DNA of 64,000 nucleotides, taken from the NCBI RefSeq assembly GCF_021869535.1, contig NW_026262666.1, positions 9,424,001 through 9,488,000 of the forward strand. The letters are read 5' to 3'. Source of the DNA: Mytilus californianus. Its lineage: Eukaryota. The notes below the pieces were generated by a model that saw only the letters and a list, made by a program, of their open reading frames with translations, searched no databases and was not told the origin of the DNA. The translations under genes and the position numbers were made by a program. Each line of letters starts with the position of its first letter. The stretch's first letter is position 1. Positions 49,376-59,644 of this stretch are shown one piece after another.

Positions 49376-52300
49376 AATATTATAGTTATATACATATGCA
49401 CTTTCATGGATCTACATTCTGTCGATACCTGTATCTTGGCATTGCACAAGGTCATGTTTTTCTCTGACTATTTATGACGTCTTTATACTAAATCCGCTGG
49501 ATGTTGGATGTGTACTGATTGATAATGTATGCATGATTTTTTTTTATTAGTTGTTATTGGCTTTGAACTAGCTGTCAGTAACTTCGAGTACTCTCAGATC
49601 TGTACTAAGTTTACTCGTTTGAATTGTTCTACATGTGTCATTTCGGGATCTTTTATACCTGACTATGCGGTATGGGCTATGCTCATTGTTGAAGGCCATA
49701 TGGTGACATATAGTTGTTACTTTCTGTGTCATTTGGTCTCTTGTAAATAGTTAAGTCATTGGCAATCATTCCACATCTTCTTTTTTATATTATTTATTTC
49801 ATAATTAACAAGTAGTTACAAATTTGTTACACATCAAATACTTTGTCAAATATTCAAAGAATTTTATGAAAATTTAGCAGAAGTTTTTTTATGATAAAGA
49901 TAGATGGACTAATTAGTTTTTTACAGTTAAAATTTACAGACAGCCTTGGATTACTTTTTTTTGTTGACATAACAAGTTTGTAAACCATCATGGATTGTTA
50001 TGAAACTTGGACAGAAGCTAATCTCCAAGACCAAATTTTTTTTTAAAACTCTGTATTGTACTGATATATGGACTCATTTCTAAATCAACATGATTACACT
50101 TTTACACTGACAGCAGCAATCGTAGGAGCGAGAGACAGGGTTCTGAGGAACCCTTTACAATTATTTCTATTAATTCGTATGTCAAGTTGCAGCTGTAGTA
50201 TTATTGTTAAGGGGAAAATACTTGTATCCATAAGACAAAAGGACAAAGATGTGAATAGTCTTTATATTTCGACGTAACAAATGATTTTGGTCATATTTTC
50301 ATTGTCTTGTTAACAGGTTAAGCATATAATTGGCGAATTCGAACGATTGTAAAATGCAAAGATAATTAAGATTTCTACAAAATACTGTAAAGACATGGGC
50401 CAATTACTGGCGCTTTTATGGAGATTAACATGGGTTGCAAAATGACCATATTTGCTTTTAGCCAAGAGACATGATTTTTAGGGCCTATAGTAATAATTAC
50501 GTGATGAAAATATGTTCTCAATGGTCATATTCTATAAATTAAAAAAAAAGAATACTTCTACAAAGACACATTTCTGATTATTCTCCTGCTGATAATTTTT
50601 GCCATTTTTAATTTCACTTCATTTAGAAAATCTGATAGAGGCAGATATGTCAGTGTGTTTCGTGTGGGAGTTATCATAAAAAAGGTGATTTTGATAACTT
50701 TAATTGAAAAATTGCAACAGTAAAAGGTAAAAATGACAGTTTTGATCAAAATGGATGGAAGTTAGTCTTGACATTCTGACATTTCTGTTTCTATCAGATT
50801 TTGTATTTCTATAACGGTTGAAATGTTTGTTGGAAGGTGCGATAATCGAAAACATTTTTAGTTCCAGGTTTGGTACAGATTGGACCAGCAGAATCCGTGG
50901 AGAAGATATTTGTACGTTAACATAATCCTTTGCGCCAGGTTAGCTGAAATGTTGTGAGTCAAAATATTTTCAACTGCCGTCGTGTTGGAATGAACCGTCA
51001 CATAAATTATTGGCAATTATTTACTTGTTATGATCATAAGGATATTTGGTCTGACCTATGAACCAACGACCCCCCTTTTCGGGAAATCAAAGCGAACATG
51101 CTAAATGTACGCTACTGGTGCGGTAAGATATTTTCGGCTTCAAATATGTTTAATCTAATGTAAAAATCTCGAAACAAAGATGCTTGCTAAACTATGTTAG
51201 AATCATTTTAAAATCATGTTGAATCCTTACGTTCTTTGAATCCTTTTTATTGATAGATTTGTATTTCCGTTCTCGATATTATCCGTTCCGTTATGATAAA
51301 TTCTACAAAAGAGAGGTGCAAGATACCAAAAGTGACATTCAAACTCAAAGTCGAAAATAAATCGCCATGGCAAAAACAAGAAAAGACCAACAGACAAACA
51401 AAAGTACACAAAACATAAGATGAAACCCCAACAAAAACAGACTTATTCGGAAAGGATATAGTTACGATACTGTTGTCAAGTCATTAAGGATTGCATATTT
51501 TGGTATTAATATTGATTCACTCGTAGGGTCTTTGCATCGGAAATAAACACATTTATTCTAAAACCAGTTGTTGGCATGATACGGGTTGTGTTCTTCTCAT
51601 ATATTTTATGATGGTATGATACTAAACCCCTAACGGGAGGGATTGTACTTGATTTTCATATGATATGAGGGTGATCTCAGGAGTTCCAGAAGGGTAGGCG
51701 GATCCTGCTTCACGTGTTTCACCCGTCATGTTGTTCATGTTAGTATATACCCGGACGTATAAAGACATTATATAATAATGACAAAAAACTATTATAGTAA
51801 ACTGGTATCAACCTTACTATACAACTATTCAATAGATTCATAATAGTTTTCATTGTAATAATTTCAGATTTTGATATTGCTTAATGTGAACCTTCTGATT
51901 TTGAACAATATCTAAAATCATATTCATATTTCAATTCAAGCTTTTTTGAATATTGTATCTACAAATCACTCAGTTGTAACAAGGTGGTCACATTTATTTT
52001 GTATCGTGTATACTATTTCTATATGTAGACCTCCGTCACTAGTAAGATAATAACCATGATGATAAAACAAAATACAACAGTTGCGAAATTATTTTATTAA
52101 GATGAAAATATAATTTTGCATGTTCCTATTATTGAAAGTATTACACTTCATATGTTCTACCATCCCATACTCATACATCCACAATCACCGTTCCCTAGAC
52201 TGATGGATGTAACCCAAGAACAACACATGCATCGATAAACCAGTGGTGAAGTAATGTGAATCTATTAATACCGTCGCTCCGTTTCTATATTCTGGTCTGA

Positions 52301-53400
52301 AAAATAATGTAAAACTTATTACATAACAAAGAGTGTAAACATTTGTTAAATTTTGCTTAATCGATCTTGTCTCGTAACGCACTTTCCTTTTCATTAAGCC
52401 TCAGTCTTTATTCAGTGAGCAAAATAAATGTAGTCTTGAAAAAGTAATGATGCGCATCATAATTTTGAAAAAGTGCAATTTTTTTTTCTATCGATTGAAG
52501 ATAAGTCTTTCAATAAACGATTTTCAATATTTCATTATATAGATATAAGAAGATGTGGTATGAGTGCCAATGAGACAACTCTCCATCCAAGTCACGATTT
52601 GTTAAAGAAATCCATTATAGATCAAAGTACGGTATTCAACACGGAGCCTTGGCTCTTTCCGAGCAGTAAGCCAAATAGGTTTAAAAAATAACAATTGACA
52701 TATCTTAGTTGTATTTCCTTAAGTTTGTGACATCTTCTGAACTCAAGAAAATTGGAAGACTTCATCAAGTGAATGATGTTATATCCTCAGTACCTTATGT
52801 CGGCCATCTGTAATTTGGCGGCCATATTTTATCGTGGCTCCATATCTGAATTTTGTCTATACCCGTTAATCTTTAACTATGCCAAGTTTCATACTTTTAC
52901 CATAAAGTGATCAATTATTCTGATATCCGCTGGACTATTAGGGGAACTTTTCTCATATTTGAGATACTTTCTGATTGGTTTATTGTTATTTGCTGAAGGT
53001 TCAGGTTGAAACACTGTGATTAAGGGATTGATAATAAAATATATCTTTTTATTCAAAGAAAATAATGTTATCTAATTTTTCAAGCTAACTTTATGATTTT
53101 CTGATCGTCGCAAACTTGTTGAATCGTTTTTGGCAAATCTATATATGATTATACATGTCCTTGCAAAGAAATATTAATTTCCAAACACATTAAAGCAAAT
53201 TTTCTTGTCCTATAAAATTGAAAGCTTTTATTCACGGTTCCATGTTTTAAACAGTGTCCTCGGCTGACAATCACGGCCAACGTTAATTGTCAGGTAAGAT
53301 AAGCATCTCCTCCGAGATGATGGTAAAAACCCTTGTCCAATTAAAAATCCCTCCACTCAAAATTACCGATGAAAAACTAAAATGTAAGTATTGAAAAATA

Positions 53401-53721
53401 GCTACTAACCCGAATAATTCAGTTGTTATATTCCGCTGATCTACGATAACTTCATTAACTCTCGCAATTAACCTTCCAAGTAGGTGAGATCGAATACTGT
53501 TAACCAACTAATTTTCGCGAGCGATTTATTTTCGCGACTTTCTCGAGTAGAACAATAACGCGAATATAAATCGTCGCGAATATGTATAACTTATTTAACT
53601 ACATCAAGTTAATTTGAAAATCGCGCAATGGACTAGAAAGGGATTAACGCAAAATAAAGTATCCGCGAAAATAAGTTGGTTTACAGTACTGGGAGGGACT
53701 GAATTATTCGGGTTAAGTAGC
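53401..53721. mobile_element. TA-target MITE containing a nested second TA-target MITE (53497-53686)
   Basis: Outer: TA|GCTACTAACCCGAATAATTCAGT ... ACTGAATTATTCGGGTTAAGTAGC|TA. Inner: TA|CTGTTAACCAACT ... AGTTGGTTTACAG|TA. Confidence 0.82.
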
Positions 53722-54677
53722 TACGAGGGGACATTGTAATGTGTCACTTACCTTTGACATATTCTAAGATGATTGCTTCTCCGTCCAGAATCAATACCGT
53801 ACACAACCTTCATTCTGCAGTCATTATTAAAAGAGACGAGTCCTCTTTTAGCACGATGTCCTGAAATAAAGTACCACAACTCTTTAAGCTTTCTCTTTTA
53901 GATCCCCTGGATCACATCAATTATTTAACAAGAAATGTTCCAAAGGATATTCATCGTTCAAAAGTTTATCATTCGTTTAATTAAGAAAACACAAATCGCT
54001 TAAGCAAAAACATCATGCATACACTGTGACAATTTTACAAGTATACATCATATATTTGTAACCATATATAAATTGAATGCATACATTTGAACATTTAAAC
54101 ACAATTTTTTCAAAAATTGTGCCGAATCTTGCTAAGGTAATTTTTGCATGGGCATAGAAACCTTAATGTTTCAGGATTTTAATATTTTATAATCAGTACA
54201 TTTACAGAGAATGACTATATCTGTGACTTCTGGGTAGCTGATAAAACACTTACGGTACCAATATTTCTTCACTAGATGCTCATTTCGACAATACATGTCT
54301 CTTCACTGATGTTCGAGGACAAAATATTTGAAAATACATAATTTAAAAAATAAAAAGATAACCTTGGGGACGTACAAACTCATTAATGCTACCAGAATTC
54401 TTATTTGATACGCATAACTTTTTTTTTACCTGTGGAGCGAGTCATATTATATACTTCAGCATCTTGAGGTATCTTCTTTTCCTTGTACAGTGGGTATTCA
54501 AAATCCTGATAAAACTCCTTTACAGCCCCTTTTAGGAAAGTAGGTTGAATGACGTCATGAACATCGGCATAGTACATTTCCGTGACAACTTTCCCATCTG
54601 CACTAGTTATGCTTTTATCGCCTTTATTCTTTAAAAAATAATGTTTTTTAATTGTTGCATTATTGCAATACACACAC

Positions 54678-54689
54678 AAGAGAGAGAGC

Positions 54690-54728
<39 letters not shown>
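54678..54728. repeat. (GA)n microsatellite
   Basis: Near-perfect GA run in an intron of the BRICHOS-type gene. Confidence 0.95.
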
Positions 54729-54730
<2 letters not shown>

Positions 54731-57700
54731 TTTACACATAGATTAAAATTAACGCTACCAATTTACTGCAAAGGATACGCACTTCGACAGTTAATAGCTC
54801 TTTAGTGATGCTTAAGGCCAAGCGTAGTCTGTATTACACAGCTATTCTTTTTATATCTGGACAGAAGAGCATGTTTTTAAAAAAGACAATAGAATAATAA
54901 TAACCTACTTTTCAGGTGATTATTTATAAATTACGATGATGCCATACCTACACTTAAAAGCTATTCAAATAGGTACGTAGGTTTTAAGCCAGAGGTTATA
55001 CAAATTTGTCATTATTATATAAGGATTATATAGAAAATGAAAACTAAATGATTTATTTATTTGAAAACATAAATCAGGTGATGACTTGTATGAATTCCTT
55101 TCGGCAATAGCAAATCAAAAATGCATTGCGATCTCAGTTCTGCTCGTTACAGAAATACGACTTATAAAATTATATATTCCGAGTTGTATCCTTAAAAAAT
55201 TACCCAAATTTGATATTTTGTATTTCTTCTAAATATATACATGTATTCATTTGCATTAAATGCTTTCATAAGGTAATACGATTGTTGTCTTTTTCCGTTA
55301 AAAAAATCCATTTTTTTTGAGTGCATTTCTACATAGGTAAACTGAGAATAAATGACATGAAGTTGAAATTGCCGTAAAACGTAACGGGTGCCATATGTGC
55401 AGCAGGATCCACTTACCCTTCCAGAGCACCTGAGATTACCAAAAAACTGGGGGTGATCTCAAGTGCTCCAGAAGAGTAAGAAGATACAAACGTAGTATAT
55501 TTCATAGTTATGAACACAATGTTACTATTTCATACCCAGCTATGAATAAACGCCTCTGTTATTTGTCCAGCATCTATTGCGAGTTCTCTGTCTATATCCC
55601 TCAGTCTACACTGATTTATGGATGGGAGACATGTCAGCTGTTGACCCTGATACACAATACTATAGTGTCAATAAAAAAGTAATTGGATGTTTAGTCATTA
55701 ATTTACTATCCAATTTTTAGGCAAGTAAATATTTAAACAATTTGAATTGGCATGGAATGAATCGACTTTTCTCGTCAGAGTGAGTTACGATATTACGAGA
55801 TTAAAATCCGTTGAAATCTTAATTTTCTACATGGGAAGTTAATCAACATAAGAATAAACAGACGTAATTCTTGCCAATGAAACAAATAGCCATTGAAACC
55901 AGGGAAATGATATAAATAAGAATATTAAACGTTAACTAAGCAGAGATTAAAAGTATTCGTATGTAAAATTGACCGGATTATCAATGTCGTTGTTACCAAG
56001 TAAGCTACCAATAATGTTTTAATGAATCAATATTGACATCTTTTAAATCAATTTGACCACATGACCGGAGAAGAATCATAAAATGAAACTTGTAAACGTG
56101 AAAATGTTGGTGGGTTATTGTTTTTTGCATAATACAAGATGCAGGACGTTGTTTTAGTATTATAACTTCAATCTCCGGTGCAGAGAGTTCATATATCCAT
56201 TCATTATAAGTTCCGCAATACTACACTAAGGATATGACATATACTGTGTCTTTTGTAGTATGGAACGGAACGGATATGATCTGTGCTCCGGAGGTTGATT
56301 TTACTTGTCTCGAAGTTTATTCTACAAACCTGACGGAAGTCTTGGATTTGGAATGATTCGATAATATCATTGTGTGCTGGTGTGTGAATCTTCACTATAT
56401 TCTTTTCCAGATTGGTTTCTATGTTTTCTAAATACTTTGCCTCCCCGTCAATGATTTGATAATCAAATTTCTGAAAATGATCGAAATTCATCAATTTAAA
56501 AAGAATCAGTTTCAAACACTTAAAATAAATCGTATGATATTATATAAGTCGTTTACACAAAACAAATCACACGAAAAGGAGTACGGAATAAGTAACTCTG
56601 ACATTAGAGTAGTAAACGAAAGACAAGTAGAAGATAGGCTATCTCGGTTGACAATTTACTCGAAATACATGTCAGTATATGAAAAAGATGGAAGTCATCA
56701 ACAGGAGAATAAGATACCACTTAATCATGTTGAGTGTTAATTTTGTCAAGATGTAGCCTATTAACTATGATATTTCAAATAGATTTCAGAAATAATACGG
56801 TATAAAAAAAAAGTAAAGTCACAAAAATACCGAACTCCGAGGAAAATTCAAAACGGGAAGTCCTTAATCAAATGGCAAAATCAAAAGCTCAAATACATCA
56901 AACGAATTGATAACAGCTGTCATGTTCCTGACTTGGTACAGGTATTTTCTTATGTAGAAAATGGTGGATTAAACCCGGTTTTATAGATAGCTAAACCTCT
57001 CACTTGTATATATAGAGAAGAAAATAGATTGAAAAAGATCCAGTTTGGAGGGTATTTTCCGTTTAACCTTTTAATTTTTCAATAAGTATTCATTTTCTAA
57101 TGTTTTATTCGTATTTCTACATGCTGTCTGTAACATGTACACTTACAGTTACTTTTTTTTTAGTTTTTAAATGCTGATTTGGCTGGAAAAACATAACATG
57201 CATTTATTGAATTAGTAATTTGTGTCGAATTAATATCACTGCTTATTACAAGAATTTGCAGTTTTTATGAACTAACATACTTTAGATTGCTAAACCTGAG
57301 TATTTGCTATTCCTATCAGCAACTCTTTGAAAGACATTAGTCTTTCAAAAGGGATTTCAGGCATTTTTCCGAAGTGTTTTCTAAATACTTATGGTTTTAA
57401 TTCAATCGTTAAACGATCAAAATTTTATGAAAATAACTGCTGGTTACTAACAATTGTGCAAATGTGTTAATACAAATAAAACAAATTATACAAATAATAC
57501 AAAATTGTCATATATCAGATATGGGTCCAACTTGTAAATGATCTGACATAAAAATATACATACCATATCAAAAGCCATGACAGCAGACAGGAACAACAAT
57601 TCAAAGACAATCATCATTATTCTTCCCATGTTGAAGGGCTATCTTTAAGTCTGCACTGAAAATTAAAAATTATTAATTCCTATCAATCAAATCGTTATAA

Positions 57701-59644
57701 AACTAAGGCAATTAAGAAACAGTTTTCATTGAAGTTATATATCAAGGAGTTATCTAAGAAAATAATAATTAAAAAACAAGTTGGACTCGCTTATGAATTA
57801 AGTGCGAATAAAGGTGATAGGCGAATATTTACCAACAATAATTTTATATAAAAAAATAAAAATAAAAAATTGTCTTGTTATTATACCATTTTTCTTCCAA
57901 TAAACAGCTCTAAAATAACAAATCATTCTCGATTTTACTGTTGACCAAACATTTTAAAGCCTACATGTAATAGCATTTAAATTATAACTGTGTCAATGGT
58001 TCAATTATAATCAATAAAAATATTATGGCAAATAATCTATAGATTTCGCAACTACTTACCTTTTGCAGTCTTTTCTCAAATTCGAAATGACAGAAATCAT
58101 CAATGCTTTTATGCTAACCAACCAGGATGCATATGATGCTTCTGAGAATATCTAACTTTAGAAAATCCTTTAAATCTATTAATTATTTGCTGCGCAAGCA
58201 TCTTTGGAAGACCTTCAGTAATTAATTTAACAAGGTGTTAAGTGGTATGAAGTAGTCATACCAGCATTGGCCAAGAAACCTTCTTTAATGTGATCGTCTA
58301 TGCTTAAGTATTCTGCGAATTTATCCCTATCAACGCCCTGTGAAAACAATATATTGGAAAGAAACCTCGCACTTACAAACATGATAAGTCTGGTCACATT
58401 CTTAATGTGCCTTTCAGAAAGGACTTTTTTTTAAATTTTCATTGGAGTTTGTTAGTTCGTTAACTTATTCACTTCAACAGAACTCAGCAAAGCACAAAAC
58501 TTGCTGAGTTCTGTTTAACTATATTGCAAAAAATATCTGTTTCCTTAATAAAACAGATAAGGTTACACTGAATTAAGAACAAACAAAAACATATAGAAAA
58601 AATAGTATATAAGTGAACAAAAGAAATATTTCGTTAAATATGTGATATATCAGAAATAAAGTGATGTGTATTTTTCTCATGTACACACTTTTTTTTAAAA
58701 AGCATGCACTACAGACCAGTTGATTTTGTTATTATATGACAGATCACTTGATATTTTATGCGACTGTAATACAAGTGAGAGGTTTGGCTAGCTATACAAC
58801 CATGTTTAATAATCAACCATTTTTCTACATAAGAAAATGCCTGTACCAAGTCAGGAATATGACAGTTATTATCCATTCGATTGATGTGTTTGAGCTTTTG
58901 ATTTTGCCATTTGATTAGGGGCTTTCCATTTTGAATCTTCCTCGGAGTTCGGTGTTTTTGTGATTTTACTTTTGATACTGATTTTAAACTCAAAAGAATT
59001 TATCGATGTTTTGTGCTTTGCTGAGTTTTGTTGAACCATATTGCAAAATTTTGTCTCACAAAAGATGGGGACAGTGCAAGAAGTAAAATGGTATGGTGTT
59101 AACTGCCATAAATAAACAGAATGGTGAGACCCGAATGTTTTCTTTATAAAAAATGCTAGTTCAGGAAACTGCATTGCATACGAATCTCCAGTAATAAAAA
59201 AGTATAACAAAAATACCAATCTACAGGGCAAATTTTAAAATGGGAAATCGATAGAAGCTGACAAAATCAAACGCTATCAATCAACGGAACAAGTGAAGAA
59301 AAACAACTGTCATATTCCTGACTTACCATGCATTTGACCTAACAGAAAAATTTGACCAAATCGCTTACCAATGTAATAATAATATCAAGGTTTCGTTAAC
59401 CGAGACTGGACACACAACTATTGAGATCTCCCACCGAAGTACTAACTTTATCACTCTGGGGAAGAAGATAACCAAGAGCGTACAGTTACATTTAAATAAT
59501 AGTTTTAATAAAGGGCAGTTCTCGTTCATACTGGAAGGGAAATTAATAACGAATTTCTCTTAAAATGACATTGTATAGTTACATATGTTTCTGGGACTAA
59601 ATTTGATTGACATTCCTGTGTAACAAGATCTTACTTATTATGTT

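What the first reader, a model, noticed from the sequence alone, without database searches (positions are those of the whole stretch)
53228..58382. Hidden BRICHOS-chaperoned, furin-released peptide precursor: candidate undescribed bivalve host-defence peptide family
Manual exon assembly gives signal peptide, BRICHOS-like domain, linker, RAKR, then a beta-strand-rich Cys-containing peptide (GLVSFNNDCRMKVVYGIDSGRRSNHLRICQSFSSVILSGG..). This is the architecture of annelid BRICHOS antimicrobial peptides (arenicin, alvinellacin, nicomicin). The mature sequence resembles none of the mussel AMP families I know (mytilin, myticin, defensin, mytimacin, myticalin). It is invisible in the ORF track because most exons are short.
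Basis: partly seen in the sequence, partly recalled or inferred. Interest (0 to 1): 0.75.

Follow-up and report, generated by a model that had tools for sequence, protein, structure and literature searches.

The report
Broken mussel BRICHOS-like precursor gene
This is a real California mussel gene for a secreted precursor (chaperone-like BRICHOS-type domain, furin-type cleavage site, cysteine-rich tail) from an uncharacterised family seen only in Mytilus mussels.

Summary
The gene is real and lies on the minus strand. They match RefSeq XP_052090222.1 (Mytilus californianus LOC127726809, "uncharacterized protein"), so the gene is annotated, not hidden.

At least 40 Mytilus proteins share one architecture: signal peptide, a roughly 150-residue domain, an N-x-T sequon, a near-invariant RxKR site, then a 77-93-residue domain with 8-9 cysteines.

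The N-terminal domain is probably a divergent BRICHOS domain:
- Two Pfam hits below threshold, in the same register.
- A 2.5-2.7 Å fit over 71-73 of the 77-79 solved residues of proSP-C BRICHOS (Z 6.2-6.5).
- A conserved Asp at the end of strand 2.

The canonical disulfide is not kept.

The C-terminal domain folds confidently (pLDDT 81, all beta) and has no Pfam or PDB match. It is about 80 residues long with net charge -6 to +7, so it is not an arenicin-like hairpin.

In this window an 11-nt deletion in the last exon shifts the frame and removes six of the eight cysteines. The deleted bases are present in the M. edulis orthologue and in a second relative.

Antimicrobial function is untested. 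The scan found this family before on other DNA of this genome (s1-320605).

The parts
57564..57629 (-). Exon 1: start codon and signal peptide (MGRIMMIVFELLFLSAVMA|FDM), GT donor
   Evidence: Identical to P0004 residues 1-22. 97% identical to the M. edulis orthologue exon.
56330..56470 (-). Exon 2: start of the BRICHOS-like domain (model strands 1', 2', 1, 2). It ends just after the conserved QDF Asp.
   Evidence: 92% identical to M. edulis with no gaps. Strand assignment from the AF2 model.
55536..55646 (-). Exon 3: carries the only two Cys of the N-terminal domain (C..PS..QC) and the following helix
   Evidence: 94% identical to M. edulis.
54430..54628 (-). Exon 4: C-terminal half of the BRICHOS-like domain and the conserved N-M-T sequon. 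Ends in phase 1.
53752..53860 (-). Exon 5: RAKR dibasic site (53844-53855) and the first 30 residues of the C-terminal domain (2 Cys). Ends in phase 2.
   Evidence: R, K and R are nearly invariant in the family alignment. 96% identical to M. edulis.
52185..52296 (-). True last exon as read in RefSeq (R-PEYRNGATVLIDSHYF...SRER, stop). It is frameshifted relative to all intact relatives.
   Evidence: It matches P0004 residues 209-245.
52260..52261 (-). Junction of an 11-nt deletion. TGTAATAATGT is present in the M. edulis orthologue and in L001 and absent here.
   Evidence: Three-way DNA alignment. Coordinates.
52157..52261 (-). Remnant of the ancestral reading frame after the deletion. It is still open, keeps all six Cys codons and the HITSP..C.CC.WVT motif, and ends at the family's conserved MGW-stop.
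   Evidence: Frame 0. tblastn match to the P0006 C-terminus.
53283..53376 (-). Intronic sequence next to a MITE-like element, not a conserved exon.
   Evidence: Not in P0004. No match in the M. edulis locus. The L001 match has a 1-nt gap and has lost the AG.

Best explanation
Window 52185-57629 (minus strand) is the six-exon gene LOC127726809 of Mytilus californianus. It belongs to a multigene family known so far only from Mytilus. Family members encode secreted pre-pro-proteins with a cleavable signal peptide, an acidic domain of about 150 residues that is most likely a divergent BRICHOS domain, a conserved N-glycosylation sequon, a near-invariant RxKR proprotein-convertase site, and an all-beta C-terminal domain of about 80 residues with 8-9 cysteines and no known relatives.

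By analogy with other BRICHOS pre-pro-proteins (inferred, not shown), the N-terminal domain would chaperone the beta-rich C-terminal domain through the secretory pathway. A furin-like convertase would then release that domain after RxKR.

In this reference sequence an 11-nt deletion in the last exon shifts the frame. The encoded 245-residue protein keeps the signal peptide, the BRICHOS-like domain, RAKR and only the first 2 of 8 cargo cysteines, so this copy is a null allele or young pseudogene as far as the cargo goes. The function of the cargo is unknown. Host defence is one possibility, but its size and charge do not point to it.
For: Gene model:
- Exon borders and phases are consistent.
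- The translation is identical to RefSeq P0004.
- Exons are 92-97% identical to the collinear M. edulis locus L006 against 77-79% for introns, and that locus has the same six exons.

Family:
- 18 hits to exon 4 among 1.84 billion representatives.
- 28 and 40 proteins found by word and profile search. All named ones are Mytilus.
- R, K and R of the site, the N-x-T sequon and the Cys pattern C-16-C-5-C-14-C-12-C-1-CC-12-C-1-C are conserved.
- The paralogue P0027 sits as an uninterrupted ORF on contigs of about 1 kb from three runs. One of these is a polyA-selected bivalve RNA-seq library (PMC6466128), so the family is transcribed.

BRICHOS:
- Pfam PF04089 hits below threshold in two divergent members, in the same register (E 0.11 and 0.028).
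- UniRef names P0034 a 'BRICHOS domain-containing protein'.
- The AF2 model fits proSP-C BRICHOS 2yad at rmsd 2.5-2.7 Å over 71-73 of 77-79 residues, 18-19% identity, Z 6.2-6.5.
- It also fits Bri2 BRICHOS 8rnu.
- The strand order includes the extra N-terminal strands 1' and 2', and a near-invariant Asp lies at the end of strand 2. Both are as described for the family in PMC9714404.

Cargo:
- AF2 gives pLDDT 81.3, all beta.
- No Pfam or PDB sequence hit.
- No fold match (best Z 3.8; Foldseek E > 1).

Deletion:
-.
Against: - No member reaches Pfam's BRICHOS gathering score (25 bits).
- The family profile finds no BRICHOS chain in PDB by sequence.
- Structural Z values of 6-7 are in the range the tool calls 'middling'. 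LolA/ependymin-like chains score as high, though at rmsd 4.4-7.9 Å.
- The canonical BRICHOS disulfide (strand 4 to helix 2) is not conserved. The two Cys are only 7 residues apart.
- The full-length model has only pLDDT 60.6.
- Cleavage at RxKR and chaperoning are inferred, not shown.
- Transcription of this particular copy was not shown.
Confidence: 0.75

Rival explanations
1. One reading: the family is a bivalve counterpart of the annelid BRICHOS antimicrobial-peptide precursors, and the released C-terminal product is a new host-defence peptide.
For: - The order of parts matches preproarenicin-type precursors: signal peptide, BRICHOS-like domain, dibasic site, disulfide-bonded beta-rich C-terminus (PMC9714404).
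- The pro-domain is acidic (median net -6) and more conserved (66% mean pairwise identity) than the cargo (46%; median net +1). This pattern is common in host-defence precursors.
- The family is lineage-restricted and multicopy, like other mussel effector families.
- A 'BRICHOS domain-containing protein' was among transcripts up-regulated in mussel digestive gland in PMC4203926. Its identity with this family is unknown.
Against: - The cargo is 77-93 residues with 8-9 Cys, not a 17-33-residue hairpin.
- Net charge ranges from -6 to +7, and 8 of 22 members are neutral or acidic.
- The cargo has a strongly conserved core (HITSP.VY.C.CC.WVT), which suggests a specific fold or partner rather than membrane attack.
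- No similarity to any AMP family in Pfam.
- There are no activity data.
Confidence: 0.17
2. The 11-nt deletion is an assembly error or one allele of a heterozygous individual. In that case M. californianus has a working copy of this gene encoding an intact cargo of about 80 residues with eight cysteines.
For: - After the deletion the old frame is still open for 34 codons to the conserved stop, with all six Cys codons and the family motif intact.
- The first five exons show no defects and remain at exon-level conservation.
Against: - An 11-nt loss in non-repetitive sequence is not a typical consensus error of long-read assemblies (general knowledge).
- RefSeq modelled the shifted frame as it stands.
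- A 34-codon open stretch has about a 20% chance of occurring without selection.
- No second M. californianus sequence could be examined.
Confidence: 0.25
3. The N-terminal domain is not BRICHOS but a LolA/ependymin-like open beta-sheet ligand-binding domain. The precursor analogy is then coincidental.
For: The top structural rows are LolA and EPDR1 (Z 6-7.3; Foldseek E 0.015-0.1).
Against: - Those alignments have rmsd 4.4-7.9 Å and 4-12% identity. 2yad fits at 2.5-2.7 Å with near-complete coverage of the target at 18-19% identity.
- No Pfam Ependymin or LolA hit at E <= 10 in about 30 family members scanned whole, whereas BRICHOS appears twice.
- The conserved Asp, the convertase site and the C-terminal beta cargo fit the BRICHOS feature list (PMC9714404).
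Confidence: 0.12
4. The family is a fast-evolving, Mytilus-specific offshoot of Out-at-first (OAF). OAF is the BRICHOS protein with a signal peptide, a convertase site and a 70-residue cargo with four disulfides. The family would then have an OAF-like, non-immune extracellular role.
For: OAF is the closest match in overall layout and cargo size, and it occurs in molluscs (PMC9714404).
Against: - Pfam OAF (PF14941) is not hit at E <= 10 in any scanned member.
- No OAF sequence was available from a tool for direct comparison.
Confidence: 0.1

Closest known systems
Out at first (OAF), BRICHOS subfamily (PMC9714404)
   Same: Cleavable signal peptide, a BRICHOS domain of about 145 residues with the extra N-terminal strands, a predicted proprotein-convertase site, and a long (70-residue) all-beta mature polypeptide with four disulfides.
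   Different: No detectable sequence similarity (Pfam PF14941 not hit). The canonical BRICHOS disulfide is not kept here. OAF is a single conserved gene across animals, whereas this is a multicopy family seen only in Mytilus.
Annelid BRICHOS-AMP precursors (arenicin, alvinellacin, capitellacin, nicomicin)
   Same: Pre-region, BRICHOS, dibasic processing, C-terminal disulfide-bonded beta peptide, and a lophotrochozoan host.
   Different: Their cargo is a short, strongly cationic membranolytic hairpin with 1-2 disulfides. Here the cargo is about 80 residues, has 8-9 Cys, ranges from acidic to basic, and has a conserved core. Reviews state that BRICHOS-AMPs are known only from polychaetes (PMC9756803).
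Chondromodulin-1 / tenomodulin
   Same: [quoted passage not shown]
   Different: They are type II membrane proteins, not signal-peptide proteins. They are vertebrate proteins. The C-terminal domains show no similarity (no Pfam hit, no fold match).
Bri2/ITM2B and proSP-C (solved BRICHOS domains 8rnu, 2yad)
   Same: Best low-rmsd structural matches to the N-terminal domain. Both have a conserved Asp at the end of strand 2.
   Different: Both are membrane-anchored. Their cargo is a 23-residue peptide or a transmembrane helix. Both keep the canonical disulfide.

Membership tests
BRICHOS superfamily | Match to the curated sequence model (Pfam PF04089, gathering score 25 bits) | tested here: not met
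   The best hits are 15.1 bits (E 0.028, P0052) and 13.1 bits (E 0.11, P0013), in the same register. The window protein and the single exons give no hit. One paralogue carries UniRef's name 'BRICHOS domain-containing protein'.
BRICHOS superfamily | BRICHOS fold: anti-parallel sheet (strands 1', 2', 1-4, 4', 5) with two helices | tested here: inconclusive
   2yad fits at Z 6.2-6.5, rmsd 2.5-2.7 Å, 71-73 of 77-79 residues. 8rnu fits at Z 4.9. The strand and helix order fits. However, Z is below 8, LolA-like chains score similarly, and the model has pLDDT 60.6.
BRICHOS superfamily | [quoted passage not shown] | tested here: met
   The Asp of the QDF motif is invariant among the 20 sequences of alignment A2 and at least 90% conserved among the 28 of A3. 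It ends model strand 61-66.
BRICHOS superfamily | Conserved disulfide between strand 4 and helix 2 | tested here: not met
   The only two Cys of the domain are 7 residues apart, on model strands 71-76 and 81-86. There is no Cys in or near helix 140-147. The strand-4 Cys may be retained with a relocated partner (inference).
BRICHOS superfamily | N-terminal signal peptide or signal anchor, and a proprotein-convertase site before a C-terminal mature polypeptide | tested here: met
   A hydrophobic N-terminus is present. R, K and R of RxKR are at least 90% conserved. Actual cleavage was not tested.
Annelid-type BRICHOS antimicrobial peptide precursors | Short (about 17-33 residues), strongly cationic beta-hairpin cargo with 1-2 disulfides | tested here: not met
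   The cargo is 77-93 residues with 8-9 Cys and net charge -6 to +7, median +1. The model has six strands.
Annelid-type BRICHOS antimicrobial peptide precursors | Demonstrated antimicrobial or membranolytic activity of the released peptide | not testable with these tools
Out at first (OAF, PF14941) | Match to the OAF family model | tested here: not met
   PF14941 is not listed at E <= 10 for any scanned member.
Known mussel AMP families (defensin, big defensin, mytilin, myticin, mytimacin/macin) | Sequence-model or fold match of the mature domain | tested here: not met
   No such Pfam family appears among hits at E <= 10 for 25 C-terminal domains. No defensin, macin or knottin chain appears among the fold matches.

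The most novel reading that the evidence does not exclude
The cysteine-rich C-terminal domain of about 80 residues is a new disulfide-rich beta fold. Intact family members would release it as a Mytilus-specific extracellular effector (host-defence or cytokine-like) made safe for secretion by a BRICHOS chaperone. That would be the first BRICHOS-cargo effector family outside annelids and vertebrates, and an expanded one.
Probability: 0.2. Interest if true: 0.7.

Novelty: new variant of a known kind. Interest (0 to 1): 0.4.

Why it matters
BRICHOS pre-pro-proteins are studied as natural anti-amyloid chaperones. In annelids they are the source of potent beta-hairpin antibiotics. A multicopy mussel family that couples a divergent BRICHOS-like domain to a confidently folding cargo of about 80 residues with no known fold would widen the range of BRICHOS clients. 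It would also give mollusc immunology or physiology an untested secreted effector family.

For this locus the practical message is narrower. The peptide proposed for synthesis does not exist, and this copy is frameshifted. Any experiment should therefore start from an intact paralogue or the M. edulis orthologue.

Tried and rejected
- **Pfam on each exon by reference.** Nothing found; the pieces are too short.
- **tblastn of the exons against the window.** No second copy in the 64 kb.
- **The look-up of sequencing runs.** There is therefore no read-level check of splicing, expression or the deletion.
- **Family profile and cargo profile against PDB sequences.** Only chance-level hits.
- **Foldseek on the full-length model.** No hit at E <= 0.001.
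- **Weak single Pfam hits.** Cys_knot (E 0.11) on one cargo, and Lar, WIF and others. All treated as noise.
- **Relative-rate count of window-specific substitutions in the last exon against exons 4 and 5 and intron 4.** Too few sites, and L001 groups with M. edulis, so the age of the deletion cannot be read from it.
No family, and not part of the protein.
- **Literature searches for a mussel BRICHOS family, shell-matrix or byssus links.** Nothing relevant.
- **Chondromodulin-like identity of the cargo.** Considered and rejected for lack of any match.
- **Profile-profile comparison with BRICHOS or OAF alignments.** Not possible.


Full report
**Observation.** Reading the minus strand of 52800-58800 gives five exons with AG/GT borders:
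- 57564-57629
- 56330-56470
- 55536-55646
- 54430-54628
- 53752-53860

A local script confirmed that their phases fit (0, 0, 0, then split codons 1 and 2). I joined the exons only in that script, to check the frame. The exons were searched one by one by reference. Later whole-protein work used stored database proteins.

**Identity of the gene.** Exon 4 alone, searched against 1.84 billion representatives, found 18 relatives. One is a 245-residue protein, P0004, that is 100% identical over the exon. P0004 is RefSeq XP_052090222.1, 'uncharacterized protein LOC127726809', of Mytilus californianus. Its first 208 residues equal exons 1-5.

The M. edulis protein P0035 (258 residues) lies in a locus (L006) that is collinear with the window gene from upstream of exon 1 to beyond the last exon. 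It has the same six exons. Exons are 92-97% identical without gaps, and introns 77-79%. In a related Logan contig (L001) the corresponding stretch has lost the AG and carries a 1-nt gap. It sits beside a MITE-like insertion in intron 5.

**The frameshift.** Intact relatives continue after exon 5 with a last exon encoding ...DC.N.HITSP.VY.C.CC.WVT...C.C..MGW. In the window this sequence is present but in another frame. Three-way DNA alignment shows that the window lacks 11 nt (TGTAATAATGT). Both the M. edulis orthologue and L001 have these bases, identically. The junction is between 52261 and 52260.

The RefSeq protein therefore runs into a shifted frame and stops after 24 further residues. It keeps two of the eight cargo cysteines. 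The ancestral frame downstream is still open to the conserved stop with all six Cys codons (52157-52261).

**The family.** Word and profile searches gave 28 and then 40 proteins. Every named one comes from M. californianus, M. edulis, M. galloprovincialis, M. trossulus or M. coruscus. Nearly all are labelled uncharacterised, and one carries UniRef's name 'BRICHOS domain-containing protein'.

Alignments show these parts in order:
- a signal peptide;
- a domain of about 154 residues with many invariant positions;
- an N-[IM]-T sequon;
- RxKR, with R, K and R at least 90% conserved;
- a domain of 77-93 residues with the fixed pattern C-16-C-5-C-14-C-12-C-1-CC-12-C-1-C (8-9 Cys).

Mean pairwise identity is 66% for the N-terminal domain and 46% for the C-terminal domain. 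Net charge is -13 to -2 (median -6) for the N-terminal domain and -6 to +7 (median +1) for the C-terminal domain.

The paralogue P0027 is an uninterrupted ORF on contigs of about 1 kb from three runs. One of them is SRR3401653, a polyA-selected RNA-seq library of mixed bivalves (PMC6466128). Family members are therefore transcribed and spliced. Expression of the window copy itself was not shown.

**Is the N-terminal domain BRICHOS?** Sequence evidence is weak but consistent. Pfam PF04089 is hit below threshold by two divergent members in the same register (13.1 and 15.1 bits against a cut-off of 25). The window protein and the other members give no hit. The family profile finds no BRICHOS chain in PDB by sequence.

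An AF2 model of the intact orthologue has pLDDT 60.6, with 77-89 in the core blocks. Its order of elements is strands 21-30, 33-42, 47-52, 61-66, 71-76 and 81-86, a helix, strand 125-133, helix 140-147, then strands 153-158 and 165-169. This corresponds to the BRICHOS core with the extra strands 1' and 2' described by Sanchez-Pulido and Ponting (PMC9714404).

An exhaustive structural search gives proSP-C BRICHOS 2yad_A at Z 6.2, rmsd 2.5 Å, 71 of 77 residues, 18% identity. A second look gives 2yad_B at Z 6.5, rmsd 2.7 Å, 73 of 79 residues. Bri2 BRICHOS appears at Z 4.9. LolA and ependymin-related chains reach Z 6-7.3, but at rmsd 4.4-7.9 Å and 4-12% identity. The tool warns that Z under 8 can reflect a common arrangement.

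Of the five family features listed in PMC9714404:
- The signal peptide, the convertase site, the disulfide-bonded beta cargo and the conserved Asp at the end of strand 2 (the QDF Asp) are met.
- The strand-4 to helix-2 disulfide is not met, because the two Cys lie on adjacent strands.

I rate a divergent BRICHOS domain at about 0.8.

**The cargo.** Modelled alone with 25 aligned sequences, it gives pLDDT 81.3 and six beta strands. It has no Pfam hit, no PDB sequence hit and no fold match. The best VIA Z is 3.8, only 14 chains reach Z >= 2, and Foldseek gives E > 1. It is therefore a confidently predicted disulfide-rich beta domain without a recognisable relative. It does not match defensins, macins or knottins, and it is not an arenicin-type hairpin.

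**Mechanism.**
- Shown: the architecture, its conservation and transcription of the family.
- Inferred from established BRICHOS biology (PMC9714404): the N-terminal domain shields the beta-rich cargo during secretion, and a furin-like convertase frees the cargo after RxKR.
- Unknown: what the cargo does.

An acidic, better-conserved pro-domain with a more variable cargo, and a lineage-restricted expansion, are compatible with a host-defence role. Against that role are the cargo's size, its charge spread (8 of 22 neutral or acidic) and its conserved core motif, which argue against a simple cationic membrane-active peptide. I give antimicrobial function about 0.17.

**Comparison and novelty.** By layout, the closest known protein is OAF (signal peptide, BRICHOS, convertase site, 70-residue cargo with four disulfides). 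The closest by phylogenetic neighbourhood are the annelid BRICHOS-AMP precursors. Chondromodulin and tenomodulin share BRICHOS, a furin site and a Cys-rich domain. None shows sequence similarity to the cargo, and Pfam OAF is not hit. Reviews state that BRICHOS-AMPs are known only from polychaetes (PMC9756803), and I found no paper on this mussel family.

The scan had already met this family on another piece of this genome. Finding s1-320605 describes an intact, transcribed six-exon paralogue with an 83-residue, eight-cysteine cargo. My independent results agree with it. A sibling note on this window (s1-342949) builds a four-cysteine peptide from a supposed frameshift inside the spurious exon. 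The evidence here contradicts that reading.

**Verdict.** This is a real gene of an interesting but uncharacterised BRICHOS-like precursor family.

Noticed in passing
window 53399-53724: MITE-like element in intron 5. Near-perfect terminal inverted repeats of about 23 nt (agctactaacccgaataattcag / ctgaattattcgggttaagtagct) and an internal 38-nt inverted repeat (53495-53532 / 53651-53688). Window 53036-53732, which holds it and that exon, has no match in the M. edulis orthologue locus.
   Followed up: partly
window 56809-57009 and 58769-58973: Two inverted copies of a repeat of about 200 nt (153 nt at 91% plus 42 nt at 88% complementarity) flank exon 1 and the upstream region. Probably a dispersed mussel repeat.
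   Followed up: no
window 54679-54736: (GA)n microsatellite of about 55 nt in intron 3, about 50 nt upstream of the exon 4 acceptor.
   Followed up: no
It is not part of the RefSeq protein and has no Pfam family. The region aligns to the M. edulis upstream region only at the non-coding level (77%). It may be 5' UTR or promoter-proximal sequence.
   Followed up: partly
L001 1196-1312: The related Logan contig (SRR29152242, closer to M. edulis than to the window) has a 6-nt insertion in exon 5. It adds a cysteine (GLVSCYGRNDC), so the cargo Cys number varies between close relatives.
   Followed up: no
proteins P0023, P0029, P0041 (M. californianus LOC127726689-691): Three further family members lie on the same 12.8-Mb M. 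californianus scaffold as the window gene, which suggests a local cluster. None is within this 64-kb window.
   Followed up: no
Not examined here.
   Followed up: no
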